Of a stretch of DNA of 64,000 bases, positions 3,895-64,000 are shown piece after piece; position 1 is the first letter of the stretch, and every line of letters begins with the position of its first letter. The translations under genes and the position numbers were made by a program. The notes beneath the pieces are model-generated. The model was not told where the DNA came from. It made no database searches and saw only the letters and a list, made by a program, of their open reading frames with translations. This stretch comes from Selaginella moellendorffii (taxonomy: Eukaryota > Plantae > Lycopodiophyta): positions 1,841,419-1,905,418 of the forward strand of contig NW_003314275.1 in NCBI RefSeq assembly GCF_000143415.4, written 5' to 3'.

Positions 3895-4407
3895 TGTGAG
3901 GTCCAAGTGTATAGCTATAATATCATATATTAATATTAGTATAGTGGGATTTTTGTAGCCATCAAATTGGTTTCAGTCTAGACCACTCGCTCTTGTATAT
4001 AAGCTAGGGTCTTTGGGCTAATTAATATGCACATTTCTATATTTTATTTTTATATTCCATGCACTCACATTAGTGAAGGTGAGGGGCAACTTTGATTGTC
4101 CCTGAGGAGTGCTTGGATTTAGGATTTTACTTTAGATCTAGCTTTTGCATTATCTAAACCTCCCTTTCTTTATAGCTTTTTCAATTTTTTCTTTTTTACT
4201 TTTTTCCTTTTCATTCATTTTCATGGTAGAATAGCAACCTCCTCCTCCTTTGACTTAAGAGTAGCAATTAGGACAATTGCTCAATGTTATATGGTTGCAG
4301 TTGAATAATCAAACTCAGTTGATAGCAACATTCATGGCGTATGGTATAGCTTCTTTTGCTTTTGCTGCCAATCCTTAAGTCTAACCAGAGTTCTTTTGTG
4401 GAAATCC
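3895..4407 (+). mobile_element. 5' fragment of a short-LTR gypsy element: LTR (3895-4069), decayed PBS and leader
   Basis: LTR runs TGTGAGGTCC...GCACTCACA (~175 bp) and is followed by TAGTGAAGGTGAGGGG. It is the reverse complement of 7940-9383 and a direct match to the LTR at 10895-11071. Homology stops at 4407. Confidence 0.8.
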
Positions 4408-41826: not shown

Positions 41827-43318
41827 TTGCATTGATTATATTGGATGGGCATTAAGGTAGAGCTCTAGCTAGAAGGATGGGAATGGAACATATGCCATAG
41901 ATGAAAATGTTCTCTATGATCATTCTCTTGACTTGCTCATATGCTGTGGGCACAACCAGAATTGAACTGGGCGAAGTGTTACTTATATTGGATAGCCATG
42001 AAAGATCAAGCACTTATTGTGAATCCACTGGAGGATCCCTCCTTCAAGTTTCCCTTCTTCTTGTTGTTTTCAGCCTGCACGCCTGGAAAGAAAGAAAAGT
42101 TGATCGCTAAAACATCCACAAGAAATGGATGATGGAACTTACTGCCTCTAACAAGTGCAAAATTGGAGCAAAAATGTAATCATGCCAAGTTTCAAATCCA
42201 ATATTAATAAATCAATACTTCATGCTATCCTATAACCCTAAATTCTTTGAAGTGTATGCAGCATGCTTCCAGTTTCTATATTGCATTTTATAGCTTCTTC
42301 TTAAAAGAAAATAACTATAACCTCATAGAAAGTAAAATATGAATTTTAAAAATAAATTAGACTGAAATTAGAAATCATAAAAATTCTTTATAAGAGAATG
42401 AGAAAGTAAGAATAACATAAACTTAAGATAGTATTAATATTGTGTTTTTATTATATAGTTGAAATAAAGTAAAATCATACTTTAATTTAAATATTTCTGG
42501 CTACAATAAGCTTTTATTTGTATTTAGTGGTTTTGGTGGTATACATTTGGCCTTGCAAAGCTCGATATATCTAGTATTGGTTTGGCTTAGTAAAACTAAA
42601 ACATGATTAGAGGGTAAAGAGCTTAATTGTGAGCTTGAATGAATGTTTTGTTCTTGTGGATGGTGCTTCCTTTAATGGTGGATGTATTTTAAGCAAAGAG
42701 CTTGCTAAAATAAATCTAGCTCTGTCAAGAGAGCTCTTATAGATGATGCTTTCCATTATTGCTAATGGTTATCCTAGTCATGACATAGTTTAGCATGTAT
42801 GTTCTTCATTTAAGATTTTCACCTTTTATAACCTGCCATACTTCATACTAATATATAGGCTAGTGATGAAATTTGAATTCCTCTACTTAAAATTGAAATA
42901 TAACCTTGAAGAACAAATAAATTTTAAAAAATTCAAACTAAAGTAGATGAAGAATAACCATTTACAACTTCTCAAAAGCTCTTCTAGTGACTAAAGTCAC
43001 TATCAATAATGTTGTTGCAATATAGTCTATGACTTCTAGATTTGCTAATGCACATTACATTGATAAGTCTAAATGGAGAAGGTATTGTGGGATTTAGCCC
43101 AGTATGATAGAGTGAAAATTCTTGATTCTGGATTGTTGCTATGTGTTGCTCAAAACAAGTTTAGAATAGAGAACATCACAAAAAGCTAGAACTAAATACT
43201 TGTGTAAAATAGCACCTTCAACACCATATAAAAATGGTTTAAATAAAATTTTGATATCTTTGCTACTCAATGTTTTAAATATATTGTTAAAACAATATAC
43301 ATATTAATGAAACAAAAA

Positions 43319-44030
<712 letters not shown>

Positions 44031-45074
44031 GTTCTTACCCAATCTCACACTCCATAGGTTGAAACAAATTAATAGAAATATGAGAAGCTTTGAAATATTC
44101 AACAATTTGAAATGCTTGAACCTCATGAAGGTTTTAATTCACAACCCAATGTGCAAGATCCTTTGCAATATAAGGCATAAATATGTATCTCAAACTTTGT
44201 ATATATTATGCATTAGATGCATCTAAAATGCTAATGTCTTTTATTGCTTATAAACTATATCACTTTCTCGTAAAGCTTTTTTTAGAGATGCTCAAGGCAT
44301 TGGAAGAAGAAAACCAAAATTTAGAAAGATTTGTGTATATATTTTGTATTTAGTTTCATGTTGAGATGCCATGGATAAAATGCATAGCTTGGGAGGCCTA
44401 TATTCTATTCATATCCTTCTCCATATTGTTGGTCTTTAGTGCATGATTGCTCCTCTTAATCTGTTTTGGATGACTAAATTTGCAAATAGCATGCACATAG
44501 GTATTGAAAATTCCATACAATTGCTTTGTAATCGATAGCTTGCAAGAGACAATGTAATATGTAGTGCCACAAATCATGGTATGGATATAAAATCCATATG
44601 ATACTAGTTTACAATACACTGTGAGAGCAAAGTATGAAATAGTAACACAAAAATCTTTGAAACTAAATCATGTACTCACAATCCATATGGCACAATGTAT
44701 AAGGGACCTCATTGGTATACATTTGCTTCCAAATCTTAGACAAGTGCATTTATACAGGCCTTGTAAGGTTGTGTATAGTTAAAGTTTCATGAATTTTATA
44801 TTGACCAAAATGGTGTCTAGCTTAAGTAGGAATTCACAATTTGTGAGACACAAAATCCTTAAGCCCCAAAGTGGAGCCAAAAGGGTGCCACATGGTAATG
44901 GCTAAGGCAAAAGCTAAATGAGCATAACACATTTGGATTAAAACCTCTGACTTGAAAAGTCGAAAGTAGGAGTGGAACTCTTAACAAAGTGCTCGAAGAA
45001 CGAGCACAAAGCAAGCAATAAATGAGTCTCTATAAAAAAGGACACAAAAGGACCAACATATGACATGTGGAAGT

Positions 45075-45390
45075 GTCTGAGATGGAGTCTGAGAAAGAGT
45101 TCGAGAAGGAGTCCAAGATGGAGTCCAAGAAAGAGTCTGAGATGGACCCAAGATGGAGTTCGAAATGGACCTAAGATGGAGTCTGAGATGGAGTCTAAGA
45201 TGGACCTGAGATGGAGTTCGAGATGGACCCAAGATGGAGTCCAAGATGGAGTCTGAGATGGACCCGAGATGGAGTTTGAGATGGAGTCTGAGATGGACCC
45301 AAGATAGAGTCCGAGATGGAATCCGAGATGGAACCAAAACTGAGACTGAGACTGAGACCAAGTCCGAGTCCAAGTCCAAGTCTGAGTCCA
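45075..45390. repeat. 12-bp minisatellite (RAGATGGAGTCY / RAGATGGACCCR) grading into 6-bp units
   Basis: Repeated GAGATGGAGTCT, AAGATGGAGTCC and GAGATGGACCCA, then GAGACT and AAGTCC hexamers. Confidence 0.9.
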
Positions 45391-45419
45391 AATACTAATA
45401 CAGGCTGTTGGGTGAAAGC

Positions 45420-47255
45420 TCAAAGCGATCATCCCCTAGGGGGGCTATAGGGGGTTCCAAAAGTATAGTAGGGAGAGTGTGGGGGTTGAACTCTAGTGGA
45501 ACCAATTTGGTTAGGAAAGGCTAGTGTGATTCAAAAAAGCTATGCCCACGTATTGGGTGATGATATAACCACTGAGGAATCCAAGGCTAACCATTGAGGA
45601 ATCAAAGGTTAGAGTGAAATGGAAAAACAAGCGGAGTAGCTTGGTAAAGTGTTCAAGAGCTAGCTCTAGCTTGTAAGCTTTTGAATTTAGACTTCCCAGG
45701 AAGTCACCCAACCTAGTACTATTCAGCTTTATTATCATTTCTTGGCAGTGGCCATTTGCTTGTGTGTCTTCATGGCTCTTGGCTTTAGTGGTCCAATTTG
45801 CTCTGTGCTCCTGTCCCTTTGCTCCTTGGGCTGTATGCTCAGGAGTCGTTCAGGCAGTGGTTGCCACAACTTGAGCGAGCAATGGAGACTTGGTGATGGT
45901 GGAAGGACAATTTACACAAATGACAATGACGACCTAAGGACACTTAACCTTAAATATCCCAAGACCCTTAACCAATTGAAAAGGGGGTGCACTCTTATTC
46001 ATGGGCTCTTTCCCTCTATATTTGAACCCCATGGATTGTCTCTCAAATTGTTTTTTTAGTTGCTTACAACAATTCATCACGCTTCCCTACAAGTTCACGC
46101 CCTTGTGAATAAAAGGTAAGAGCCATAACTCTCCTGAGAGCCCTGCTCTCTTGACATCCTACCCCTTGGGTTGAGCCCAGCTGGAGCAAGCTAGACCTAC
46201 CAAATGTCAATCAACATATGGTGCAATTTCCCTAAGCCAACCAACAGAGTTGAACTCAAGACCCCCTCTAATATCAAATGTAAGCTCATGACTTTGGACT
46301 TCCTGGGAGGTCATCCAACCCAATATTATTCAAACCCAAGGACATTTAACCTTAAATATCCCAAGACCCTTAACCAAGTGAAAAGAGGGTGCACTTTTAT
46401 TCATGGGCCCTTTTTCTTTATATTTAAACCCCATGGATCGTCTCTCAAGTCGTTCTTTTTGGTTGCTTACAACATAGCTCTCCCAGGAGATCGAATGGTC
46501 AATACTCTCAATCCAAGTGTGGGTGGCATTACTTACTTGGATACCTAATGTGGCTCATTGGATCCTCACTCTAGCCATATGGCTAGGGCACCTAAGGGTA
46601 AAAGGTGGGGAGAGTACCCACAAGGCTCGCATAGGGCCGCAGTGTTTCAAAATGTTGCTCTAGAGTCTTAGACTGAAGAAAGGAAAGGGAGTAATCCTCT
46701 TATGTGGTGACCAAGGATGCGGTCATGTGGCAAGGATGTCTTAAAGGTCGGTAGGATATAATGGTCGAGCTTGTGGGCCTTGACCTAGTGGGAGTGTTGG
46801 CGAACACAACTGGGGACAGAAAGGGACTTAGTAAGGACTGAAAAAGGGAGATTGGGGAAGGCTGTTCCCCATCTCTATAGGCATCCCAAGGATGCTAAGA
46901 AGTAGATCTAAGATGATCACTCATGGATGGATGACCCAGTCTTTGAGAGATAAGACTGTGATGCAAATAGTGTTGGATCACCAGTGTGACAAAGGTGAAT
47001 GGGTATGGCTTTAGCGTAACGGGCTGATATGTCAGTGGTACTTTTGGGTGTCGGTCATAGGATTGGACACATAGAGCACTTGGACTAAGTGCAAAGGTTG
47101 AGTGGTATGAATGCCATTTTCGGGGCTAGCATGTCCCCAAGTCCAGGATAAGACTTATGGAGGTTATGAGTGAGACTCCTTCAAGTGGTCGAAACTATGG
47201 TTAAGTGACTAAAGTAAAATAGAAAATTTAGTCACTTACAATTTAGTATTAGAGT
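45420..47255 (+). mobile_element. Nested, decayed LTR fragments related to the 48390 LTR family
   Basis: 45430-45490 and 45800-45850 match segments of LTR 48390-49522. A ~135-bp direct repeat (45935-46071 / 46335-46473) ends TTGCTTACAACA. A segment ending ...CACTTACA at 47240 is followed by a decayed PBS (TAGTATTAGAG). Confidence 0.65.
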
Positions 47256-47505
47256 TGTTCCTTAGTCTGACTTTTATTGGTGGTCAAGTATATCACCATT
47301 TGATATTGGCATCGAAAGGTCTCAGGAGTGGGTCTTCCTTAAGGAGTAGCATGTCGAGATGGCATGACTCTCCACCTTAATTCATATATGAATATGTTAA
47401 TAATGTGGTGGATAAAAAAGGGCCAATAAGGGAATAACTTTGGGATCTTGGGAACAATATAAAGTTTTTCTCAGAGAGTTGAGGATGTGATCCAAATGAG
47501 CATTT

Positions 47506-48389
47506 TGTAAGCAACTAATTTTTCCATTCTACTTTAGTCATTTAACTGCACCTCCGACCACTTGGAAGAGTCTCATTCACAACCTCCATAAGTCCCATTC
47601 AGAACTTGGGGCTTGTTAGCCCTGAGAATGGCATCCACGCCACTCAACCTTTGCACTTGGTCCAAGTGCTCCACATGTCCGATCCCATGAGCGACACCGC
47701 AAGGTACCACCGATATACTAGCTTGTTATGCTAGGCCATGCCCATTCACCTTGGTCACATCGGTGGTCCAACACCACTTACATTACAATCTCGTCTCTCA
47801 AAGATTAGGCCATCCATCCATGAGTGGCTATCCCAGATCCACTCCATAGCATCCTCAAGATGCCTGCAGACGGGGAATAACCTCCCCCAATGTCTCCTTT
47901 CCGGTCCCCACCAAGTCCATTCTTGTCCATGGCCGTGTTCACCAACACTGCCACTGGATCAAGGCCCATAGGCCCGACCACTAAGTCCAATTATCCTCTG
48001 GGACTTCCTCACTATGTGACTCTGTCCTTTGTCACCACACTAGAGGGCTACTCCTCTTCCTTTCCACAGTCTAGGACTTTGGGGCAACATTTCGGAACAC
48101 CGTGGCCCTACGTAGGCCTCGTGGGTACTCTCCTCGCCTTCTACCTTTGGGTGCTCTATCCATGGGCTTAGAGCAAGGTTCCGTTGAGCCACCCTAGGTA
48201 TCCAAGTAGGTAGTGCCACCCACACTTGGACTGGGAGTATCGGCCAGTCGATCACCCGAGGGAACTAGAGCCCGCTCTTGAACACTTCACCAAGCTACCC
48301 CGCTTGTTGGTTCGTGTTCACTCTAGTCTTGGACTTCCTAGTGGGCAGCTCATCACCCAACACTGGGTACAGCCTTTCTGGGCCAAACT
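47506..48389 (-). mobile_element. LTR fragment, inverted relative to 46475-47240 and cut off by the element at 48390
   Basis: Begins TGTAAGCAAC; its reverse complement aligns, with many substitutions, to 46475-47240 and to 45545-45670. Confidence 0.7.
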
Positions 48390-51300
48390 TGTCGCGAATG
48401 TGACTTCGGGTATCGAAAGTTACCTGTCGGCTAGTCCTTTCAGATATTCTTTCCTTACTGCCACGACGGCAGGAGATCGGTATTGCTGGACCCGTTATCA
48501 GTTTCCCACTTGAGCTAGTTGAGAAACTGGTCAATGACCATGCACTTAGATTGGATAAACATAAGGTAGGAACCCTATGTGTTTCTTGCTGAGCATACTC
48601 GGCCTGGTTTGAGAAACTTGAGTCATTGGCTTGCACTTGCTAGTATCAAGAACCCCCGCGATATTGAGATTGGTCCCTCAATATCGCTAAATGATAGCTT
48701 ACTGTGTCTGCCAAACACCCTCGCTATCATGCCCTTTGTGTTAGTCTCAATTCGGTCCCAAATGCTATTTATGGAAAGCGTCCAGATTTGCTCATTTGGC
48801 ATATCTACGGAATGTAGAGATCGTCCTGAACACAATGGTGTTCGTCCCGTGTCCAAATTCGCAATCTAGGGACATTCCATATTTAGTAAGTTTCGAGCTT
48901 GTCCCAGAGACTAACTCCTAATACTAAGGGAGGCTTGGGGTGAAAGCCCAAAGCGTGTGTTCCTCAAGGGGGGGGGGGCTGTGGGGGGTTCCAAATGTAT
49001 AGTAGGGATAGTGGGTAGGTCGGGCATGGCCGACCAACTTGAGGCATAGTCTAGCTCCCGCTTGCATGCCTGTCCTTGTTCTGCGTCCGGCTTGGGTCTA
49101 AGCCCAAGTTCCATTCCATGCTAGTTGGTGGAGTACCCATGTCCTCGCGTTAGGCCACCGGTATGCCAAAATAGCGCCAGACTCCGTTTGGCTCCGTTTT
49201 GCGTGCTAGTCCTAGCATTGGGATGCTGGTTACTCTAGGACTGTTCCAAGTCGCTCCGGGCTCCTGTCCCTTCGCTCCTTGGGCTTTATGCTCGGGAGTT
49301 GCTCCGTGGTTCGGTTCCGTCACTCCTTGGCTCCATGCTTGGGAGTTTGGCACCGTTCCTTTGTTCAGTGGCCCAAGGCCTTGAACCTCGGGTTCCTATG
49401 GACACGTGGCATGTGACATGTGGCATCTGTCACGTGGCACAAAAAGGGTTTAGGTTCCGCTTCGTGGTGTTATCCTATGGTAAATCACCATAGGATAAAG
49501 GGTCAAAACCACGTGCGCTACATTTGGTATCAGAGGATGAGTCTCAGCGAGTACTATTCAATGAGATTGGGCAACTAGTCTCGTTGCATACGCAGAGATG
49601 AAAACGATGATCCGAGTGGGTACACGTTTGGTGCAAAGGGTTCACAATTGTTCCTTGGGTATGGGTTTGGTTACCTTTTGTACCATATTCTGTGAGCTTG
49701 AGCTTGGGCTCACAAAAGGGATTGAGTTGTTCCGGTTACACGAGTTTACGCTTGGGCTCGTGAGTGAGGCGCATTAGCAACTTGAGGTTACACTTTGAGT
49801 TGGCAGGATTAATGTTAGCCTATCGGTGGTTCCATGAGTTGTTCCATGTACCGTGAGTAAAAGCAAACCTTCCCTGGGTTTGCTATGAGTGGCAAATAGG
49901 TTGGTCCGTAGCTATTTAGCACGGCATTAGTAGATCCTTCCTAGGCATGATTATAAGTGGATCAATCAAGACTGTAGGGATTAGTCTATTGGTTCAAGTA
50001 ATCATTGCCGTGCTCTATTATAAACTTTTCTTGGATTGGACTGAAGGCAGTGCGAACGCAAGCTTGAAGTGTAGTCAAAGATGAGACCGAAAAGAGAGTC
50101 GTCGGGGATGAAGGATCAAACACGTAAATCATCTTCTCTTTTGGAGAGATGGTTTGCAACGAGGGGTGACTCATTGCTCGTGTTCACATCATGCAATCAA
50201 GAGTCCCTACCTTGATGCATCTTGGAGATGATGGTCTTACAAATGGTGAGTTGTGGGATGGATAGCGGTGAAATGCTATACCATTTTGTCTAGGCTTGCT
50301 ATTGGAAGACTTGAGTTACAATGCTCAATTCTTTTTCGGGGAACCTTGCTATTGCTCCTTGAGTAGCTTGGTATTGGATTAAGTTTTGAGTTTGATCGGA
50401 TAGTGAGTGGTATGAGCTTGTCTGTGTTGTGAACAAAAGTTAGTGGTGTTGGGTGTTGTAAATCTCTATCGGTAGAGTGTGGCATTTATGTTGCATTCTG
50501 TCAAGTTGAGTTGGCACTTGATATTCATGTAAACCTTTGAAGTAATGACATTGGCATTGTTCATGGTGTTGCTCAATTGATGATCAAGTCATTGTAATAC
50601 TTATATCATATCCATGTGATAATGAGCAATGTGTTTACGAAGTTGCTGGTTAAATGATGATCAACCCCAAAGTGGTTGATGGTGAAGCTAGTCTACTTGC
50701 ATGAAGTAACATTATAGTAGCTTTGACTGGATTCTCGATGGTGGTCCATTATGCTAAGCTTAAGTTGGTTCCTTGTTTCCTTGGGAGTTAACCCATAAGG
50801 AGTTGGAAAAGGGTTGTGGCATTCATTTGCTATAACTCATTGGTTTATCCGTTAGCACTTGGAGTAGATTGTTGGATGGAAAAGGTGTGTAGTTAAGGCA
50901 TTAATATCGCTAACACTTGTGTTAGTGGAAGTGGCATTGTTGATTCGAGTGATGAGGAATTTTCCTTATAGCTTGATTTTCCATGTCATTTTTCTTGTTA
51001 GTGTTTTGGCTTCACATTGGATCTTGAAGGTGATTGAAGAAAAGTGTTAGTGCAATGTGAATATCTGAAGATGTGGTCTTTGTGATCAAGCCTTGGATGT
51101 TCCATTTGCATTTTACGGATATCAGTGTTGGATGTCGAAAGAATGGGCAAAAAGATGTTCAAGGCTTAAGCATACTATGGGTCATGAGAATTGGTGTTAA
51201 GGTGAACTTATGTGAAGTTGTTAGTAGAAAGAAGTTGGTTGAGTCTTGAAAGTTTGTATTTCTGGACTGAGAGTCATTCTTTCTCTAGGATGGAAAATTT

Positions 51301-53816
51301 TCCACAAATTTTCTTAGACTTATCCAATGGCTGATCTGTTGATCACTTTGCTCGAAAACCATTCCGTTTTCGTAAGCCAGTACAAACTAGTGAAGGGGTT
51401 AGAGTTAACTTCGGTTAGCTTAGACCTAGTATGTAGTTTGTATGATGTGACCCGAAAGGGATGCTGACTTTTGGGGCTAAGGCAATTGAGTTGGATAGAG
51501 TCTGGAGTTAGTGTAGAGAAGTGGCCGTTGCACTTTTCTAAGAAAGGTGACCCTTGTGCCTTTCTTCTATAGTGTTATGCTTGGTGGCAGGTTGCACCTT
51601 GCATTTTGTTAGACTCTATGAGAGTAGTGAGCTCTCACTGATCTTGACTTGGACTTGGTGGTCCTGCGCCTTGGCTGAGGATAGTGATGTCCAACTTGAT
51701 TGTTTGAAGTTGAGATGTTAGTACCCGTACTATAGCTTTGTATAAGGAGGTTGTGTACCGATATGAGTCCATCTCATGGTCTTCACTTTAGTTTCGACTA
51801 AGTGTCGATCATGCTTAGCTAGCCTCTTCAAGGCATGCTCAGAGCTAGTGGCTAAATGCTTTGGTGAGCTTATCGTGGTTGAGTTGGATTCGAGTGGTCA
51901 TTTGGTTTGTGCTTGTCTATGAACTTTTATCTCATACCGGAGGTATCACGTTCATGTTGGACAAGTGTATAACTCAATGGCATGAGTTAGTGTTTGGGTC
52001 TTGTGAAAGGCAAGACAAGTGATTGTTGGTTGCTTTGCAACTAGTGATTGCTTGTAGACTTTGTCAAGGGCTTTGGACACTTGCTTCGCTTGATGAAGAT
52101 TTAGCAGTGATGGGTTTACTTTACCGGATGGTATTGCAGAGGATCGTGTCATTTGACTTACATGGGTTTTCCATGTTGGCATGTCGACTCTACCTCTGTT
52201 GGTATCATTTGGTTGCGTTTAGTTCATAGTGTTGGATTTCATTGAGTCTTGGATGTGGTGATGCACTCCTTGAGGAAGTGTTATCTGTACCTGAGTAATG
52301 TTGAAGAACTAGTCTCGGATACTGACTAAAGTATCTTCGACTTTGGTTAGCTTGGTTGCAAAAGAGTTTTGAGTAGTGATTCACTCTTGCTTTCTTTTAG
52401 CTTTGTTCTGATGTTGATGGCATTAAGGTGATGCCTTGTCATTGATATTATTGACGTTGAGATTCAAGTGAGATGAGATGTCTATCCTTAGGATTGATAT
52501 TGCGTTTCATTAGTCTCGATGAAAATAGTGTTGATGATTTGGCTATGGCTTTGTGTTATTGGCATTCGTGCATTTGCTAATTAGCAACTGTGTTGACGTT
52601 CAAACAAGCGAAATGGCAAGTTTGAGTTAGTTGTGTTCTAGACGAGATTATTTACTAGGGGTTGAGCTTTGGCTTTTCCTTGAAAAGTGATTTAGTTGTG
52701 GATAACACTAACTTTACAAGCGGAAGAGTTAGTGATTGATATTGGAATGTTTGAATCCTTATTGGATTTGAGTTGGAATATATCGAACATTAATGATTCT
52801 TCTTGTGCTTGTTATGAAGTGAGTTACGTCTTGTTATAGATGGATTCATGGAGGATCATTTGGTGATCACTTGTTGAGCATAGTTTCGTTATGCTTAGCT
52901 TTTGGATTGATGCAGACATGCTCTTCATTAGCTTTGCATTATGAAGTTAGCTTATGGATGTGTTGAGGAGGATATTATGGATTATACCATGATTTCTTCT
53001 TTAGCATTGAAGTTAGTTCATGTGAGACTCGTGATCATTGTTAGGCAAAAACTTAGCTATAGACTTCTTCGAGCTTTTGGTTCTTTGAGCTTTATGCTCG
53101 TTGTTCCATATGTTAGGAGTTGTTGGGGGAAGGCATTTTAGCTCATTAGCTTCGATGTTGACAATAGTCTTTGCATCTAGCAATCATTGGTGATGATTGA
53201 CTATCATCTAAGATAGTTGATTATCCTTGTCAAGGGTTTTGCTTGATTATTGTTGGTATAGAATGATTTGCTATTCTTCGGGATGGTAGATTCTTTCTTC
53301 GATGATGATTATGCATTTCTTTATTGATAGGATGATTGATGATCTTTCATGATGGTTAGTTGTTCTCTTTGATAGCTTTTGGCTTTTTGCAAAACCACGT
53401 GTTCTTTGTGGTTTGCTCTGGATTGGTCTCTTGGGTTTGAGACATCAGTAGGATGTTGCTGACACTTGCTTAGGCAACTTAAGTTCCTTGGTATTGTTGG
53501 CTGGGATCTATTCAGATTGGCTTTTGTGATAGTTGGCAGGAATGAGTGTTTGTTGGTCTTACCGCATTCATTCTCTACTGTTGATTGTTGCTTGAGTTTG
53601 TTCTGATAGATTGGAATGTTATTTCCTCCGGGTGATACATTCGCGAGCATTTTGCTTGCCAGTTGATGATACTTTGTGTTCTTTGAGTTTTCTTTGGTAA
53701 GTTGTTTGGCATTCTGTCTGCAATCTTTGATAGTTAAGTTTGGTCATTGAGTTTTCTTGATGATACACTTGCTATTGAATTTTGTTTGATGGTGAATCCT
53801 ATGTTTACCAGTTATG
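48390..53816 (+). mobile_element. Non-coding (LARD-like) LTR retroelement, copy 1: LTR 48390-49522, PBS 49525-49535, internal region truncated
   Basis: TGTCGCG...GCTACA LTR; TGGTATCAGAG (tRNA-iMet PBS); G/T-skewed internal region with no long ORF. Confidence 0.85.
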
Positions 53817-53831
53817 CTGATCTTGGTGGTT

Positions 53832-56800
53832 CATAATTGGTAAACATAGGATTCACTATCCAACAAAATTCAATAGCTAGTGTATCATCAAGAACACTTA
53901 ATGATAAAACATAACTATCAAAGATAGCAGACAGTAAACCAACAACTTACTAGAGATAACTCAAAGAACACAAAGTATCATTGACTGACAGGCACAATGC
54001 TCGCGAATGTATCACCCGAAGGAAATAACATCCCAACCTATCAGAACTAACTCGAGCAATAATCAACAGAACAGAATGAATGCGGTAAAACCAACAAACA
54101 CCCATTCATGCCAACTATCACACTAGCCAATCCAAATAGATCCCAGCCAACAACACTAAGGAACTCAAGTTGCCTAAGCAAGTGTTAGCAACATCCTTTT
54201 GATGTCTCAAACCCAAGAGACCAATCCAGAGCAAATCACAAAGAACATGTGATATTGCAAAAAGCCACAAGCCATCAAAGAGAACAACTAACTATCACGA
54301 AAGATCATCAATCATCCCATCAATAAAGAGATGCATAATCATCGTCTAAGAAAGAATCCACTATCTCAAAGAGCAGCGAATCATTCTATATCAACAACAA
54401 CCAAGCAAAACTCTTGACAAGGATAATCAACTATCTTAGATGATAATTAATCATCACCAATGATTGCCAGATGCAAATATTAACTTCATCGAAGCTAACA
54501 AGCCAAAATGCCCTCCCCAACAACTTCTAACAAATGGAACAACGAGCATAAAGCTCAAAGAACCAAAAGCTCGAAGAAGTCTATAGCTAAGTCTTTCCTA
54601 ACAATGATCACAAGTTTCGCATGAACTAACTTCAATGCTAAAGAAGAAATTATAGTTCAACCCACAATATCCTCCTCAACACATCCATAAGCTAAACTTC
54701 ATAATGCCAAGCTAATGAAGAGCATATCTGCATCAATCCAAAAGCTAAGCATAATGAAGCTATGCTGGACAAGTGATCACCAAACGATCCTCCATGAATC
54801 CATCCATAGCAAGACGTAACTCACTTCATAACAAGCACAAAAAGAATCATCAATGATCAATATATTTCAACTAAAATCCCATAAGGATTCAAATATTCCA
54901 ATATCGATCACTAACTCTCCCATTTGTAGAGTTAGCATAGTCCATGACTAAATCATTTTTCAAGGAAAAGCCAAAGCTCAACCCCTACTAAATAACCTCG
55001 TCTAGAACACAACTAATTCAAACTTGCCATTCCGCTTATTTGAACGTCAACACAGTTGCTAACTAGCAAATGCACGAATGCCAATAACACAAAGCCATAG
55101 CCAAATCATCAACACTATTTTCATCAAGACTAATGAAACGCAATATCAATCCTAAGGATAGACATCTCATCTCACTTGAATCTCAACGTCAATAATATCA
55201 ATGACAAGGCATCACCTCAATGCCATCAACATCAGAACAAAGCTAAAAGAAAGCAAAAGTGAATCACCACTCAAAACTCTCTTGCAACCAAGCTAACCAA
55301 AGTCGAAGATACTTTAGTCAGTATCCGAGACTAGTTCTTCAACATTACTCAGGTACAGATAACACTTCCTCAAGGAGTGCATCACCACATCCAAGACTCA
55401 ATGAAATCCAACACTATGAACTAAACGCAACCAAATGATACTAACAAAGGTAGAGTCGACATGCCAACATGGAAAACCCATGTAAGTCAAAGGACACGAT
55501 CCTCCGCAATACCATCCGGTAAAGTAAACCTATCACTGCTAAATCTTCATCAAGCGAAGCAAGTGTCCAAAGCCCTTGACAAAGTCTACAAGCAATCACT
55601 AGTTGCAAAGCAACCAACAATCACTTGTCTTGCCTTTTACAAGACCCAAACACTAACTCATGCCATTGAGTTATTATACACTTGTCCAACATGAACGTAA
55701 TACCCCAGATATGAGATAAAGGTTCATGGACAAGCACGAACTAAATGACCACTCGAATCCAACTCAACTGCAATAAGCTTACCAATGCATTTAGCCACTA
55801 GCTCTGAGCATGCCTTGAAGAGGCTAGCTATGCATGACCAACACTTAGCTGAAACTAAAGCGAAGACCATGAGATGGACTCATATTGGTACACAACCTCC
55901 TCATAGACAAAGCTACAGTATGGGTACCAACATCTCAAACTCAAATAACTAAGTTGAACATCACCATCCTCAGCCAAGGCGCAGGGCCACCAAGACCAAG
56001 TCAAGATCAGTGAGAGCTCACTACTCTCATAGAGTCTAACAAAATGCAAAGTGCAACCTGCCACCAAGCATAACGCTACAGAAGAAAGGCACAAGGGTCA
56101 CCCTTCTTAGAAAAGTGCAATGGCCACTTTTCTACACCAACTCCAGACTCTATCCAACTCAATTGCGATAGCTTCAAAAGTTAGCATCCCTTTCGGGCTG
56201 CATCATACAAACTACATACTAAGGTTTAAGCCAACCGAAGTCAACTCCAACCCCTTCACTAGTTTGTACTGGCTTACGAAAACGGAATGGTTTTCGGACA
56301 AAGTGATAACAGATCAGCCATTGGAAAAGTCTAAGAAAATTTGTGAAAAATTTTCCATCCTAGAGAAAGAATGACTCTCAGTCCAGGAATTCAAACTTTC
56401 AAGACTCAACCAACTTCCTCCTACCAACAACTTCACATAGGTTCACCTCAACACAAATTCTCATAACCCATAGTATGCTTAAGCCTCGAACATCTTTTTG
56501 CCCATTCTTTCGACATCCAACACCAACATCCGTAAAGTGCAAAGTGAACATCCAAGGCTTGATCACGAAGACCACATCTTCGGATATCCATATTGCACTA
56601 ACACTCTTCTTCAACCACTTTCAAGATCCAATGTGAAGCCCAAACACTAACAAGAAAAATGACATAGAAAATCAAGCTCTAAGGAAACTTCCTCATCACT
56701 CAAAAATAACAATACCACTTCCACTAACACAAGTGCTAGCAATGTCAATGCCTCAACTTCACACCTTTTCTATCCAACAATCTACTCCAAGTGCAAGCGG

Positions 56801-59297
56801 ATCAACCGACAAGCTATAACAAGTGAATGCTATAACCCTTTTCCAACACCTTATGGGCAAACTCTCAAAGGAACAACATACCAACTTAAACTTAGCATAA
56901 TGGACCATTATTGAGAATTCAGTCAAAGCTACTACAATGCTACTTCGTGCAAGTAGACTAGCATCACTATCAACCACTTTGGGGTTGCTCATCATTTAAC
57001 CAAGCAACTTCGTAAACATATTGCTCATTATCACATGGATATGATATAGAAATTACAATGACTTGATCATCAATTGAGCAACACCACGAGCAATGCCAAT
57101 GTTATTACTTCAAAGGTTTATGTGAGTATCAAGTGCTAACTCAATTCGACAAAATGCAACATAAATGCCACACTCCACCGATAGAGACTTACAACACCCA
57201 ACATCACTAACTTTTGTTCACTACATGGACAAGCTTATGCCACTCTCTTTCCGACCAAACTCAAAACTTAATCCAACACCAAGCTACTCAAGGAGCAATA
57301 GCAAGGTTCCTCAGAAAAGAATTGAGCATTGCAACCCAAGTCTTTCAATAGCAAGCCTAGACAAAATGGTTTAGCGCTTCACCGCTATCCATCCCACAAC
57401 TCACCATTTGTAAGACCATCATCTCCAAAATGCATCAAGGTAGGGACTCTTGATTGCATGATGTGAACACGAGCAATGAGTCACCCCTCGTTGCAAACCA
57501 TCTCTCCAAAAGAGAAGATGATTTACGTGTTTGATCCTTCGTCCCCGACGACTCTCTTTTCGGTCTCATCTTTGACTACACTTCAAGCTTGCGTTCGCAC
57601 TGCCTTCAGTCCAATCCAAGAAAAGTTTATGAGAGAGCACGGCAATGATTACTTGAACCAATAGACTAATCCCTACAGTCTTGATTGATCCACTTGTAAT
57701 CATGCCTAGGAAGGATCTACTAGTGCCGTGCTAAATAGCTACGGACCAGCCTATTTGCCACTCATAGCAAACTCAGGGAAAGTTTTCTTTTACCCACGGT
57801 ATAAGGAACAACTCACGGAACCATTGGAACAACCCATGGAACAATCGATAGGCTAACATTAATCCTGCCAACTCAAAGTGTAACCTCGAGTTGCTAACGT
57901 GCCTCACTCACGAGCCCAAGCTCAAACTCGTGTGTACGGAACATCTAAAATCCATTCTATGAGCCCAAGAGCAAGCTCACATCATAAGGTACAACAAGGT
58001 AACAAAATCCATACCCAAGGAACAATTGCGAAGCCTTTGCACCCAACGTGTACCCACTCGGATCATCGTTTTCATCTCTGCGTATGCAACGAGACTAGTT
58101 GCCCAATCTCATTGAATAGTACTCGCTGAGACTCATACCTCTGATACCAAATGTAGCGCACGTGGTTTTGACCCTTTATCCTATGGTGATTTACCATAGG
58201 ATAACACCACGAAGCGGAACCTAAACCCTCTTTGTGCCACGTGACGGATGCCACGTGTCACATGCCACGTGTCCATGCCACGTGTCCATAAGAACCTGAG
58301 GTTCAGGGCCTTGGGCCACTGAACAAAGGAACAATGCCAAACTCCCAAGCATGGAGCCAAGGAGTGACGGAACCGAACCACGGAGCAACTCCCGAGCATA
58401 AAGCCCAAGGAGCAAAGGGACAGGAGCCCGGAGCGACTTGGAACAGTCCTAGAGTAACCAGCATCCCAATGCCAGGACCAGCACGCAAAACGGAGCCAAA
58501 CGGAGTCTGGCGCTATTTCAGCATACCGGTGGCCTAACGCGAGGACATGGGTACTCCACCAACTAGCATGGAATGGAACTTGGGCTTAGACCCAAGCCGG
58601 ACGCAGAACAAGGACAGGCACGCAAGCGGGAGCTAGACTATGCCTCAGGTTGGTCGGCCATGCCCGACCTACCCACTATCCCTACTATACATTTGGAACC
58701 CCCCACAGCCCCCCCCCCCTTGAGGAACACACGCTTTGGGCTTTCACCCCAAGCCTCCCTTAGTATTAGGAGTTAGTCTCTGGGACAAGCTCGAAACTTA
58801 CTAAATATGGAATGTCCCTAGACTGCGAATTTGGACACGGGACGAACACCATTGTGTTCAGGACAATCTCTACATTCTGTAGATATGCCAAATGAGCAAA
58901 TCTAGACACTTTCCATAAATAGCATTTGGGACCGAAATGAGACCAACACAAAGGGCATGATAGCGAGGGTGTTTGGCAGACACGGTAAGCTATCATCTAG
59001 CAATATTGAGGGACCAATCTCAATATTGCGGGGGTTCCCAACACTAGCAAGTGCAAGTCAACGAATGAGTTTCTCTAACCAGGTCAAGTATGCTTGACTA
59101 AATAGACACTTAGGAATTCCTTCCTTATGCTCATCTGGTCAAGTGCACATGCGAGGACCAGTTTCTCAACTAGCTTAGGCGGAGACTGATAATGGGCCCA
59201 GCAATACCGACCTCCTGCCATCGTGGCAGTAAGGTAAGAGTGTCCGTAAGGACTGGTCGACAGGTAACTTTCGATACCCGAAGTCACATTCGCGACA
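53832..59297 (-). mobile_element. Same LTR element, copy 2 (inverted): LTR 59297-58152, PBS 58149-58139
   Basis: Reverse complement of 48390-53816 throughout; e.g. ORFs 49986-50174(-) and 57476-57664(+) are near-identical. Confidence 0.85.
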
Positions 59298-62200
59298 CTG
59301 ACCGACCTGAGGCATAGTCTAGCTCCTGCTTACATGCCTGTTCTTGTTTTGCGTCCGGCTTGGGTCTAAGCCTAAGCTCCACACCATGCTAGCTGGTGGA
59401 GTACCCATGTCCTCGTGTTAGGCCACCAGTATGCTGAAATAGCGCCAGACTTCGTTTGGCTCCGTTTTGCGTGCTGGTCCTGGCATTGGGATGTTGGTTA
59501 CTCTAGGACTGTTCCAAGTCGCTCCGGACCCCTGTCCCTTTGCTCCTTGGGCTTTATGCTCGGGAGTTGCTCCGTAGTTCGGTTCTGTCACTCCTTGGCT
59601 TCGTGCTTGGGAGTTTGGCACCGTTCCTTCGTTCAGTGGCCCAAGGCTCTGAACCTCAGGTTCCTATGGACACGTGGCATATGACACGTGGCATCTGTCA
59701 CGTGGCACAAAGAGGGTTAGGTTCCGCTTTGTGGTGTTATCCTATGGTAAATCACCATAGAATAAAGGGTCAAAACCACGTGCACTACATTTGGTATCAG
59801 AGAATGAGTCTCGGCGAGTACTATCCAATGAGATTGGGCAACTAGTCTCGTTGCATACGCAGAGATGAAACGATGATCCGAGTGGGTACACGTTTGGGTG
59901 CAAAGGCTTCGCAATCGTTCCTTGGGTATGGATGTTGGTTACCTTTTTTGTACCATAATAATATGAGCTTGCGCTTGGGCTCATAAGATGGTTTGAGATG
60001 TTTCGTTTCGCACAAGTTTGCGCTTGGGCTCGTGAGTGAGGCACATTAGCAACTCTTTGAGTTGGCAGGATTAATGTTAGCCTATCAGTGGTTCCGTGAG
60101 TTGTTCCATGTACCGTGGGTGAAAGTAAACTTTCCCTGGGTTTGCTATGAGTGGCGAATAGGCTGGTCCGTAACTCTTTCGCACGGCACTAGTGGATCCT
60201 TCTTAGACATGATTACAAGTGGATCAATTAAGACTGTAGGGATGAGTCTATTGATTCAAGTACTCATTGCCGTGCTCTCTCATAAACTTTTCTTGGATTG
60301 GACTGAAGGCAGTGTTAAAGCAAGCTTGAAGTTTAGTCAAAGATGAGACCAAAAAGAGAGTAGTCAGGGACGAAGGATCAAACACGTAAATCATTTTCTT
60401 CTCTTGGAGAGATGATTTGCAACAAAGTGTTAACTCATTGTTTGTGTTCATATTATGCAATCAAGAGTCCCTACCTTGATGCATTTTGGAGATGATGGTC
60501 TTACAAATGGTGAGTTACGGGATGGATAGCGGTGAAACGCTAAACCATTTTGTCTAGGCTTGCTATTGGAAGACTTGGGTTACAATGCTCAATTCTTTTC
60601 TAGGGAACCTTGCTATTGCTCCTGGAGTAGCTTGGTGTTGGATTAGTTTTGAGTTTGGTCGGAAAGAGAGTGGCAAGAGTTTGTCCGTGTTGTGAACAAA
60701 AGTTAGTGGTATTGGGAGTTATAAATCTCTATCAGTGAGGTGTAGCATTTATGTTGCATTTTGTCGAATCAAGTTGACACTTGATACTCACTTAAACTTT
60801 TGAAGTAATGACATAGGCATTACTCATAGTGTTACTCAATTGATGATCAAGTCATTGTGATTTTTATATCATACCCATGTGATAATGAGCAATGTGTTTA
60901 CGAAGTTGCTTGGGTCAAATGATGATTAACCCCAAAGTGGTTGATGGTGAAGCTAGTCTACTTGCACGTAGTAGCGTTGTAGTAGTTTCAACTAGATTCT
61001 CAATGGTGGTCCATTATACTAAGCTTAAGTTGGTACCTTGTTTCCTGGGGTTTACCCATTAGGTGTTGGAAAAAAGTTATAGCGTTCACTTGCTATGGCT
61101 CGTCGGTTGATCCATTAGCATTTGGAGTAGATTATTGGATGGAGAAAGTGTGCAATTGAGGCATTGACATCACTAGCATTTGTGTTAGTGGAGATGACAT
61201 TGTTAAGTTGAGTGATGAGGAATTTTCTTTAGAGCTTGATTTTCCATGTCATTTTTCTTGTTAGTGTTTTAGCTTCACATTGGATCTTGAAGATGGTTGA
61301 AAAAGAGTGTTAGTGCAATGTGGATATCTGAAGATGTGGTCTTCGTGATCAAGCCTTGGATGTTCCATTTGCATTTCACGGGTGTCGGTATTGGATGTCG
61401 GAGATATGGGCAAAAATATGTTCGATGCTTAAGCATACTATGGGTCATGAGAATTGGTGTTGAGGTGAACCTATGTGAAGTTGTTAGTAGGAAGAAGTTG
61501 GTTGAGTCTTGGAAGTTTGTATTTCTGGATTAAGAGTCATTCTTTTTCTAGGATGGAAAATTTTTCCACAAATTTTCTTAGACTTTTCCAATGGCTGATC
61601 TGTTGATCACTTTGTCTGAAAACCATTCCGTTTTCGTAAGCCAGTACAAACTAGTGAAGGGGTTGGAGTTGACTTTGGTTGACTTAGATCTTAGTAGGTA
61701 GTTTGTATGATGCGACCCGAAAGGGATGCTGACTTTTGAAGCTAAGGCAATTGAGTTGGATAGAGTCTGGAGTTGGTGTAGAAAAGTGGCCGTTGCGCTT
61801 TTCTAGAAAGGTGACCCTTGTGCCTTTCTGTTAGCATTGTGCTTGGTGGCAAGTTGCACCTTGCATTTCGTTAGACTCTATGAGAGTAGTGAGCTCTCAC
61901 TAATCTTGACTTGGTCTTAGTGGCCTTGCACCTTGGCTAAGGATAGTGATGTCCAACTTAGTTGTTTATGGCTGAGATGTTAGTACCTGTACTATAGCTT
62001 TGTCTATGAGGAGGTTGTGTACCGATATGAGTCTATCTCGTGATCTTCACTTTAGTTTTGACTAAGTGTTGATCATGCATAGCTAACCTCTTCAAGGCAT
62101 GCTCAGAGCTATTGACTAGATGTGTTGGTGAGTTTAATGCAGTTGAGTTGGATTCGAGTGGTCATTTTTCGTGTTTGTCCATGAACCTTTATCTCGTACC

Positions 62201-64000
62201 TGGGGTATTACGTTCATGTTGGACAAGAATATGACTCAATGACATGAGTTCAGTGTTGGGTCTTGTGAAGGCAAGTTGAAGAGTGATTGTTGGTTGCTTT
62301 GCAACTAGTGATTGCTTGTAGACTTTGTCAAGGACTGCTGACACTTGCTTCGCTCGATGATGATTTAGCAATGATGGGTTTGTTTTACCGAATGGTGTTG
62401 CGGAGGATCATGTCGTTAGACTTACATGGGTTTTCCATGTTGCATGTCGACTCTACCTTTGTCGATATCATTTGGTTGTGTTTAGTCTGTGGTGTTGGAT
62501 TTCATTGAGTCTTGGACGTGGTGAATCACTCCTTGAGGAAGTGTTATCTATAACTGAGTTTTCCTGAAGAACTAGTCTCAGATACTGAGTAAAGTATCTT
62601 TGACTTTGGTTAGCTTGGTTGCTAGAGAGCTTTGAGTGGTGATTCACTTTTGCTTTCTTCTAGCTTTGTTATAGTGTTGATGGCATTGAAGTGATGTCTT
62701 GTTATTGACATTGTTGATGCTGAGATTTGAGTGAAATAAGATGTCTTTCCGAAGGATTGATATTGAGTTTCATTAGTCTCGATGAAGATAGTGTTGATGA
62801 TTTGGCTATGGCTTGTGTTATTGGCATTCGTGCATTTGCTAGTTAGCAACTGTATTGACGTTCAAATGAACTGAGTGGCAAGTTGAGTTAGTTGTGTTCT
62901 GGACGAAATTATTTAGTAAAGGTTGAGCTTTGAGCTTTTCCTTGAAAAGTGATTTAGTCATGGACAACACTAACTCTACAAGAGGAAGAGTTAGTGATTA
63001 ATATTGAAGTGATCAAATCCTTGTTGGATTTGAGTTGGAATATATTGATCACTGATGATTTTTCTTGTACTTGCTATGAAGTAAGTTACGTCTTGCTATA
63101 GATGGATTCATGGAGGATTGTTTGGTGATCACTTGTTGAGCATAATTTCGTTATGCTTCGCTTTTGGATTGATTTGGATATGCTCTTCATTAGCTTTGCA
63201 TTATGAAGTTTAGCTTATGGATTTGTTGAGGAGGATGTTGTGGGTTGTACTATGATTTCTTCTTTAGCATTGAAATTAGTTTATGCAAGACTCGTGATCA
63301 TTATAGGCAAGACTTTGCTATAGGCTTCTTCGAGCTTTTGGTTCTTTGAGTTTTTATGCTCATTGTTCTATTTGTTAGAAGTAGTTGGGGAAAGCATTTT
63401 TGCTTATTAGCTTCGATGTTGAAGTTGGCTTTTGCATCTAGCAATCATTGGTGATGATTGACTTTCATTTAGGACAGTTGATTATCCTTGTCAAAAAGTT
63501 TTACTTGATTATTGTTGATATAGAATGATTCACTATTCTTCGGGATGGTGGATTCCTTCTTTGACAATGATTCTGCATCTCTTTATAGATGGGATGATTG
63601 ATGATCTTTCATGATGGTTCGTTATTCTCTTTGATGGCTTATGGCTTTTCGCAATGCCACATGTTTTTTTGTGGTTTGGTCTAGAGTGGTCTCTTGGGTT
63701 TGAGACATCGATAGGATGTTGCTGACACTTGCTTGAGCAACTCTGGTTCCTTGGTATTGTTGACCGGGATCTATTCAGATTGGCTTCTATGATAGTTGGC
63801 ATGAATCAGTGTTTGTTGGTCTTACCACATTCATTCTGTTCTGTTGATTATTGCTCAAGTTACTTCTGATAGATTGAATGTTATTACCTTTGGGTGATAC
63901 ATTCGCAAGCATCTTGCTTGCCAGTCACTAATACTTTGTATTCTTTGAGTTAGCTTTTGGAAGTTATTTATCATACTGTCTATAATCTTTGATAGTTAAG
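59298..64000 (+). mobile_element. Same LTR element, copy 3: 5'-truncated LTR 59298-59789, PBS 59792-59802, internal region running off the window end
   Basis: Direct repeat of ~49030-53738. Confidence 0.85.

What the first reader, a model, noticed from the sequence alone, without database searches (positions are those of the whole stretch)
48390..59297. ~10.9 kb palindrome made of two LTR-element 5' halves with only a 15-bp spacer
Seen: 48390-53816 and 53832-59297 are reverse complements. Each arm is a full ~1.13 kb LTR, a PBS and ~4.3 kb of internal sequence, and both stop at the same internal position (...TTTACCAGTTATG [CTGATCTTGGTGGTT] CATAATTGGTAAA...). The unit has precise TGT...ACA outer ends but no matching TSD (AAACT vs CTGAC). 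Inference: two independent insertions truncated within 15 bp of each other are improbable. Fold-back priming or hairpin repair, or an inverted-LTR unit with two U3 ends acting as an integrase substrate, is more plausible. Both LTR promoters point inward, so the unit could yield multi-kb hairpin dsRNA and act as an siRNA source against the family.
Basis: partly seen in the sequence, partly recalled or inferred. Interest (0 to 1): 0.8.

Follow-up and report, generated by a model that had tools for sequence, protein, structure and literature searches.

The report
Old retrotransposon palindrome, three-copy compound
The 10.9-kb palindrome is real: it is two old inverted 5' halves of a gene-less plant LTR retrotransposon, followed at once by a third copy. 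The whole is most likely one botched reverse-transcription product, not a mobile fold-back element and not an assembly error.

Summary
Window 48390-53816 and 53832-59297 are reverse complements. Each arm is a TGT...ACA LTR, a tRNA-iMet-type primer site (PBS) and about 4.3 kb of body. Both arms stop at the same base, with 15 nt between them.

- The arms are only 92.4% identical. Three stretches are 97-98% identical against a 90% background, which fits arm-to-arm gene conversion in an old structure and argues against misassembly.
- The body has no coding capacity, so the element is non-autonomous (LARD-like).
- A third copy, c3, starts at 59298, directly after arm 2's last LTR base. It begins at LTR position 641, 32 nt after the LTR's only TATA, which is the predicted RNA start.
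- The left flank is one arm of an older inverted repeat, and that repeat does not resume after arm 2.

A two-U3-end integrant therefore fails both the target-duplication test and the target-continuity test.

Best reading (confidence about 0.5): one aberrant cDNA. A plus strand copied back on itself at 53831, ran to U3 base 1, then jumped to a template starting at R base 1. This predicts a 3' LTR and AAACT beyond the window, which I could not read.

Hairpin RNA is structurally possible but untested. Earlier notes of this scan report other copy-back integrants in this genome.

The parts
48385..48389 (.). Left flank AAACT. Under the best reading it is one half of the target-site duplication; the partner is predicted beyond the window.
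   Evidence: The flank is the last part of the older inverted repeat's right arm.
48390..49522 (+). Arm 1 5' LTR, 1133 bp, TGTCGCG...GCGCTACA.
   Evidence: The first 40 nt are identical to arm 2's LTR.
48998..49004 (+). TATAGTA, the only TATA in the LTR (LTR position 609). It lies in a block conserved in a roughly 75%-similar related LTR at 45370-45486. Predicted core promoter.
49525..49535 (+). Arm 1 primer binding site TGGTATCAGAG, tRNA-iMet type, 2 nt after the LTR.
49536..53816 (+). Arm 1 non-coding body, G+T-rich on the sense strand.
53817..53831 (+). 15-nt spacer CTGATCTTGGTGGTT. Its composition fits a native continuation of arm 1's sense strand (likelihood ratio about 93), so the turn-around is at 53831/53832.
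53832..58138 (-). Arm 2 non-coding body.
58139..58149 (-). Arm 2 primer binding site.
58152..59297 (-). Arm 2 5' LTR, 1146 bp. It carries extra copies of a 14-bp CACGTG repeat.
59298..59789 (+). Third copy (c3): the LTR from position 641 to its end only (inferred R-U5), with no U3. It contains AATAAA 23 nt before the LTR end.
59792..59802 (+). c3 primer binding site.
59803..64000 (+). c3 body. It runs off the window 78 bp before the position where arms 1 and 2 turn round.
48652..49513 (.). Arm-to-arm gene conversion tract 1 (about 3% divergence), with its mirror in arm 2.
49845..50244 (.). Conversion tract 2 (about 3% divergence).
51985..52631 (.). Conversion tract 3 (2.3% divergence between the arms; c3 is 12.4% away here).
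45523..48389 (.). Older, degenerate inverted repeat. Left arm 45523-45669 plus 46475-47241; right arm 47505-48389; 75-91% identity. The compound's left end sits in it. Its left arm continues outward into a related LTR.

Best explanation
Shown:
- Three copies of the 5' part of one non-autonomous LTR retrotransposon lie head to tail in the order forward, reverse, forward.
- Copies 1 and 2 meet at the same body position, with 15 nt between them.
- Copy 2 ends on U3 base 1 and is followed, with no filler, by copy 3, which starts at LTR position 641.
- All three are of similar age. Arms 1 and 2 have since exchanged sequence in three tracts.

Inferred: the block was made off the chromosome, in one aberrant reverse transcription.
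1. A growing plus strand copied the LTR, the PBS and the body up to 53831.
2. It then turned round and copied plus-sense DNA (itself or a displaced plus strand) back to that template's natural 5' end, U3 base 1.
3. It then jumped end to end onto a minus-strand template whose 3' end is R base 1, such as strong-stop DNA or a minus strand that had run to the RNA cap.
4. It went on normally from there.

The product keeps a normal U3 left end and, as predicted, a normal U5 right end. It would therefore have been integrated once, with AAACT duplicated beyond the window.

A transcript from either inward LTR would fold into a stem of about 4.8 kb. Whether this happens, or matters, is not known.
For: - Shared breakpoint and 15-nt spacer.
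- The inverted copy ends exactly on LTR base 1, and the first 40 nt of the two LTRs are identical.
- c3 starts at LTR position 641 with no filler. That is 32 nt after the only TATA in 1133 bp. About 1% of random breakpoints would fall 25-35 nt after it.
- The TATA sits in the best-conserved block shared with a related LTR.
- The spacer's composition fits the sense strand of arm 1. The likelihood ratio is 93, and only 0.07% of antisense 15-mers score as high. This gives the copy-back a polarity that matches one continuous left-to-right strand.
- In unconverted tracts the three copies are nearly equidistant: arm 1 to arm 2 is 9-10%, and either arm to c3 is 11-12.6%. Private changes are balanced, 167 in arm 1 and 157 in arm 2.
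- The left flank is an arm of an older inverted repeat that does not resume after arm 2. The integrant's right end must therefore lie elsewhere.
Against: - The 3' side is outside the window. The window ends 78 bp before c3 reaches the breakpoint, so the predicted 3' LTR and AAACT are unseen.
- The RNA start at position 641 is inferred from a TATA-like motif that I looked for after seeing where c3 begins. TATAGTA is not a canonical box. Four CACGTG boxes would then lie downstream of the start.
- c3's branch is about 1.45 times as long as each arm's in the tracts I took as unconverted (190 changes against 128 and 136). c3 could therefore be an older, separate copy.
- There is no microhomology at either junction.
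- I found no published natural example of this exact product.
Confidence: 0.5

Rival explanations
1. Palindromic cDNA (arm 1 plus arm 2 only) inserted by integrase through two U3 ends, next to or into an unrelated older copy c3.
For: Both outer ends are intact TGT...ACA U3 ends. Earlier notes of this scan report several integrants with two U3 ends or two U5 ends and a target duplication in this genome (not checked here).
Against: There is no target duplication: AAACT against CTGAC. The left flank is the older repeat's arm up to 48389 and shows no LTR similarity, while the right flank is LTR position 641. The target is therefore not continuous. Rescuing the idea needs a later deletion ending exactly on the unit's first base.
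Confidence: 0.12
2. Chromosomal replication error on one resident element: a fold-back at the body breakpoint followed by a second template switch (inverted triplication, DUP-TRP/INV-DUP type).
For: It produces the same forward-reverse-forward order with a short spacer. All three copies would be the same age. Fold-back inversions through short hairpins are well documented in yeast (PMC7467729). Earlier scan notes report chromosomal inverted triplications in this genome (not checked here).
Against: The second switch would have to leave the inverted copy at exactly LTR base 1, out of about 5400 possible positions plus the flank, and land 32 nt after the only TATA. No flanking DNA is included in the inverted copy.
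Confidence: 0.15
3. Several unfinished linear cDNAs (a hairpin or dimer with U3 ends, and a cDNA starting at R) were end-joined and captured at a chromosome break, without integrase.
For: It explains natural ends at both junctions and needs no target duplication. Capture of retrotransposon cDNA at breaks is documented (PMC4516963).
Against: Arm 1's first base is exact, with no nibbling or filler, and so is the arm 2 to c3 joint. Clean joints are less usual for end joining. The idea also needs several molecules to join in one event.
Confidence: 0.12
4. Three independent insertions during one burst, later trimmed by deletions. The shared breakpoint would be a coincidence or the result of hairpin processing.
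For: Nested same-family insertions are common in plants. The arm 2 to c3 joint looks like an ordinary LTR-end-to-target joint.
Against: The two truncations fall within 15 bp of each other in a body of at least 4.3 kb. Inverted repeats cannot be trimmed symmetrically by single-strand annealing (established knowledge). Neither a 3' half nor a 3' LTR of any of the three copies is present in the window.
Confidence: 0.07
5. Assembly artefact (false fold-back join).
Against: The arms differ at 410 sites and 20 indels, with a mutation spectrum typical of decay (316 transitions, 94 transversions; G>A and C>T dominate). Chimeric reads or assembler fold-backs give identical arms. The only gap in the window is at 8394-9278.
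Confidence: 0.03

Closest known systems
[quoted passage not shown]
   Same: One oversized daughter element is built from more than one pass over the template and is then integrated once.
   Different: Going by the abstract, the 2007 cases are fusions in which two elements share an LTR. The rice preprint has no occurrence of 'inverted' or 'palindrom'. Here the middle copy is inverted and the joints are a copy-back and an end-to-end jump.
Mu killer of maize (PMC3440606)
   Same: A partial inverted duplication of a transposon's 5' part, thought to give a hairpin RNA of about 4 kb that silences the family.
   Different: Mu killer is derived from a DNA transposon and is read from a flanking gene's promoter. 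Its silencing has been shown genetically. Here the element is an LTR retrotransposon with its own LTR promoters, and nothing is known about expression.
Antisense nested EVD insertion in Arabidopsis proposed as an LTR-hairpin source (PMC11624286)
   Same: An LTR retrotransposon in sense and antisense arrangement, discussed as a trigger of silencing.
   Different: That case is an ordinary nested insertion of a full copy. Here the two halves share one internal breakpoint.
Chromosomal fold-back inversions and inverted triplications (PMC7467729)
   Same: A short spacer at the turn-round and a forward-reverse-forward order.
   Different: There the breakpoints are arbitrary. Here one joint unites LTR base 1 with the predicted RNA start.
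Large palindromes homogenised by arm-to-arm gene conversion (primate Y chromosome; from my own knowledge)
   Same: Tracts of much higher arm-to-arm identity than the background.
   Different: Here conversion covers only about a third of the arms, and the sequence is a dead transposon.

Membership tests
LTR retrotransposon, non-autonomous (LARD-like) | LTR with TG...CA ends | tested here: met
   TGTCGCG...GCGCTACA in both arms.
LTR retrotransposon, non-autonomous (LARD-like) | Primer binding site next to the 5' LTR | tested here: met
   TGGTATCAGAG lies 2 nt after each LTR, three times in the window. The match to the 3' end of tRNA-iMet rests on my own knowledge; no tRNA gene is in the window.
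LTR retrotransposon, non-autonomous (LARD-like) | No gag or pol; long non-coding interior | tested here: met
   The longest open piece is 140 aa. Ten pieces gave no Pfam hit at or above threshold. There is no Rfam hit.
LTR retrotransposon, non-autonomous (LARD-like) | Polypurine tract, 3' LTR and target-site duplication | not testable with these tools
   No 3' end of any copy lies in the window.
Integrant with two U3 ends (inverted LTRs) | Same LTR end outward on both sides | tested here: met
Integrant with two U3 ends (inverted LTRs) | One target-site duplication around the unit | tested here: not met
   AAACT against CTGAC.
Integrant with two U3 ends (inverted LTRs) | Target sequence continuous across the unit | tested here: not met
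   The left flank is the older repeat's arm. The right flank is LTR position 641 of c3.
Chromosomal fold-back inversion or inverted triplication | Forward-reverse-forward copies with a short spacer at the turn | tested here: met
Chromosomal fold-back inversion or inverted triplication | Breakpoints unrelated to element ends | tested here: not met
   The inverted copy ends on LTR base 1, and the next copy starts 32 nt after the only TATA.
Hairpin-RNA silencer locus (Mu killer type) | Long inverted repeat downstream of a promoter | tested here: inconclusive
   The geometry is right and the central 1.4 kb folds at -1012 kcal/mol. The promoter is only predicted.
Hairpin-RNA silencer locus (Mu killer type) | Transcript across the centre, small RNAs and silencing in trans | not testable with these tools
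   No expression or small-RNA data were reachable.

The most novel reading that the evidence does not exclude
A single retrotransposition error (copy-back plus an end-to-end jump onto strong-stop DNA) delivered a ready-made hairpin gene of nearly 11 kb, driven by the element's own LTR. The older degenerate inverted repeat of a related LTR next door would be an earlier product of the same error. This element lineage would then repeatedly manufacture its own potential silencers.
Probability: 0.2. Interest if true: 0.75.

Novelty: new variant of a known kind. Interest (0 to 1): 0.45.

Why it matters
If the compound is one integrant, it is a fossil of a reverse-transcription pathway known mainly from test-tube work: copy-back followed by a forced jump between natural template ends.

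It would also show how an LTR retrotransposon can create, in one step, the long inverted repeat that plants are thought to use to start silencing a family. The idea is checkable by reading a few kilobases past the window and by mapping small RNAs.

If it is not one integrant, this is simply an old rearranged transposon nest.

Tried and rejected
- The left flank is not the missing first 640 bp of c3's LTR. Its local alignment score is no better than shuffles.
- The family is not the hairpin-packed non-coding family mentioned in earlier notes. It has only one short inverted repeat in 4.3 kb.
- There is no antisense or decayed gag-pol in the body. Pfam found nothing at or above threshold.
- There is no known RNA family and no tRNA gene.
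- The hypervariable U3 stretch (alignment columns 40-265, 22% divergent) is not a foreign patch. Its transition:transversion ratio of 38:12 matches the rest.
- Autointegration does not give this structure, by reasoning from its known products: it joins an LTR end to the body, not body to body.
- Two metagenome scans, one for the junction and one for a conserved family 28-mer, found nothing. This says nothing about the plant genome.
- The search of earlier findings by sequence and by words was blank, and it cannot look past base 64000.
- The big protein searches were not used, because nothing here rests on a protein.
- The species name (Selaginella moellendorffii) comes only from earlier scan notes. 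I verified only that the window carries plant-type genes.
Full report
**1. The observation**

A self-comparison of the window gives one reverse-complement match, 48390-59297 against itself, at 91.5% over 10970 columns. The repeat finder recovers the same arms in pieces.

A MAFFT alignment of arm 1 (48390-53816) with the reverse complement of arm 2 (53832-59297) has 5007 matches, 410 mismatches and 20 gap openings, which is 92.4% ungapped identity.

Each arm starts with an LTR running TGTCGCG...GCGCTACA. Arm 1's LTR is 48390-49522 (1133 bp) and arm 2's is 58152-59297 (1146 bp). Each LTR is followed by TT and then TGGTATCAGAG. That motif occurs exactly three times in the window, at 49525 (+), 58139 (-) and 59792 (+). 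From my own knowledge it is the usual plant primer site for initiator tRNA-Met.

The complementarity stops on the outermost LTR base on both sides. The flanks are AAACT and CTGAC.

**2.

(a) *The body is non-coding.* No open frame over 113 aa lies in the arms. The longest stop-to-stop piece in the three bodies is 140 aa. Ten of the longest pieces from the three copies gave no Pfam match at or above threshold. There is no Rfam family. The sense strand is G+T-rich. This is a non-autonomous, LARD-like LTR element. The window also carries plant-type genes at 12-38 kb: At4g08330 beta-tent, DUF1685, a SAUR-like fragment and an aldo-keto reductase. Earlier scan notes name the genome Selaginella moellendorffii. 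I did not verify the species.

(b) *There is a third copy, c3.* It runs in forward orientation from 59298 to the window end and is 89% identical to either arm. It starts, with no filler, directly after arm 2's last LTR base, at LTR position 641. It has its own primer site at 59792. The window ends 78 bp before c3 reaches the position where the arms turn round.

(c) *The arms are a mosaic.* Mismatches per 100 columns between the arms have mean 8.5 and variance 38. For arm 1 against c3 the mean is 11.6 and the variance 14. Divergence by region:

| Region (alignment columns) | Arm 1 vs arm 2 |
|---|---|
| 265-1140 (LTR) | 2-3% |
| 1500-1900 | 2-3% |
| 3650-4300 | 2-3% |
| Rest of the body | 9-10% |
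| 40-265 (GC-rich U3) | 22% |

c3 shows no dip in the three low-divergence tracts. In columns 3650-4300 it is 12.4% from the arms. There the sites where both arms agree against c3 rise to about 35 per 300 columns, while private changes fall to 1-5. That is what copying one arm onto the other produces.

Private changes are balanced, 167 in arm 1 and 157 in arm 2, and are dominated by G>A and C>T. This is the decay pattern expected of old, methylated DNA. I read the mosaic as arm-to-arm gene conversion in an old palindrome.

The amount and kind of difference also argue strongly against an assembly fold-back, which would give identical arms. The only gap in the window is at 8394-9278.

(d) *The three copies are about the same age.* In the tracts I took as unconverted, arm 1 to arm 2 is 9-10% and either arm to c3 is 11-12.6%. 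Branch lengths there are 128, 136 and 190 changes. Conversion itself inflates c3's branch.

(e) *The flanks.* The DNA to the left is the right arm of an older, degenerate inverted repeat. Its left arm is 45523-45669 plus 46475-47241, its right arm is 47505-48389, and identity is 75-91%. The homology runs up to the base before arm 1's LTR. The left arm continues outward into a sequence related to this family's LTR. After arm 2 this older repeat does not resume. c3 follows instead.

**3. What the joints say**

*The centre.* Two independent truncations falling within 15 bp of each other in a body of at least 4.3 kb are very unlikely. Inverted repeats also cannot be trimmed symmetrically by annealing. 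One arm was therefore copied from the other, or from the same template, by a turn-round. The spacer's base composition fits a continuation of arm 1's sense strand. The likelihood ratio is 93, and only 0.07% of antisense 15-mers score as high. This places the turn at 53831/53832 and makes arm 1 the leading copy.

*The arm 2 to c3 joint.* The inverted copy ends on LTR base 1. A chromosomal template switch could have ended anywhere in about 5.4 kb or in the flank. A template that is a linear cDNA strand ends exactly there.

c3 then starts at position 641, 32 nt downstream of the only TATA in the 1133-bp LTR. This TATAGTA lies in the block best conserved with a related LTR of about 75% similarity. 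c3 keeps an AATAAA 23 nt before the LTR end. Position 641 is thus the predicted RNA start, R base 1. About 1% of random breakpoints would fall 25-35 nt after that TATA.

I found the TATA after seeing where c3 begins, and it is not a canonical box. This step is an inference, not a demonstration.

**4. Best reading**

One aberrant reverse transcription produced the whole block.

1. A plus strand ran through the LTR, the primer site and the body to 53831.
2. It copied back along plus-sense DNA to that strand's 5' end, U3 base 1.
4. It then continued normally.

Strand displacement, copy-back and end-to-end jumps are established activities of reverse transcriptases (my own knowledge). I found no paper describing this natural product. 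The nearest published cases are fused complex elements made by template switching (PMC1950507). The rice preprint on complex elements nowhere uses 'inverted' or 'palindrom'.

The product has normal ends, so it predicts a single integration with AAACT repeated after a 3' LTR beyond the window, followed by the rest of the older repeat's arm. I could not read that sequence:
- The notes tool stops at base 64000.
- The public collections I could scan do not hold this genome.

My confidence is about 0.5 in this reading and about 0.65 that the block was made off the chromosome in some way.

**5. Rivals**

- *Integrant with two U3 ends.* It fails the duplication test and the target-continuity test.
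- *Chromosomal inverted triplication.* It gives the same order of copies but needs two coincidences at the second joint.
- *End-joined cDNA fragments captured at a break.* These would look the same here and differ only at the unseen right end (see PMC4516963 for cDNA capture).
- *Independent insertions.* These need the breakpoint coincidence.
- *Misassembly.* It is contradicted by the diverged arms.

**6. Function**

A read-through transcript from either would pair sense against antisense over about 4.8 kb. The central 1401 nt fold into one almost continuous stem at -1012 kcal/mol.

This is the Mu killer design (PMC3440606). It is also the kind of LTR hairpin proposed for EVD in Arabidopsis (PMC11624286). 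Nothing here shows transcription, small RNAs or any effect. After roughly 10% divergence the promoters may well be dead. I rate an active silencing role as possible but unsupported.

The mobile fold-back unit idea has no support. There is no duplication and no second copy in the window.

**7. Novelty and score**

Earlier notes of this scan, which I did not check, report several copy-back or like-ended LTR integrants and some chromosomal inverted triplications in this genome. The scan has therefore met this general kind of thing before, on other DNA.

This case is larger, has three parts, and has a joint between two natural replication ends. I class it as a new variant of a known kind, with moderate interest that depends on a few kilobases of sequence just past the window.

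Noticed in passing
window 45523-48389: An older, degenerate inverted repeat (arms 75-91% alike, 263-bp spacer) lies directly left of the palindrome. Its left arm carries about 805 bp (45670-46474) that the right arm lacks. It continues outward into a sequence related to this family's LTR, so it may be an earlier product of the same kind of copy-back.
   Followed up: partly
window 45370-45486 and 45789-45851: Pieces of a related LTR, 75-84% similar to LTR positions 519-631 and 853-915. The block around TATAGTAGGGA is almost unchanged. A 12-bp tandem repeat (GTCCGAGATGGA, about 22 copies, 45075-45332) lies just upstream.
   Followed up: partly
window 45932-46057 and 46334-46459: Two 126-bp direct repeats, 89% alike and 402 bp apart, each followed by ...TTGCTTACAACA. 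This could be a small terminal-repeat element or a local duplication.
   Followed up: no
window 49401-49439, 58235-58289, 59669-59707: A 14-bp tandem repeat carrying the G-box CACGTG, present in 2, 4 and 3 copies in the three LTRs. It lies downstream of the predicted RNA start.
   Followed up: no
window 49470-49493: A perfect 8-bp inverted repeat (CCTATGGT, a 5-nt loop, ACCATAGG) just before the AATAAA/GATAAA near the LTR's 3' end. It is conserved in all three copies.
   Followed up: no
window 43277-44032: An AT-rich microsatellite block of about 750 bp (ATATAC and TATGTG units) that is also self-complementary.
   Followed up: no
window 12000-38000: A GC-rich gene cluster with plant-type domains: Sad1/UNC, At4g08330 beta-tent, DUF1685, aldo-keto reductase and a SAUR-like fragment. 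The transposon nest begins at about 40 kb.
   Followed up: partly
window 8394-9278: An assembly gap of 885 N.
   Followed up: no
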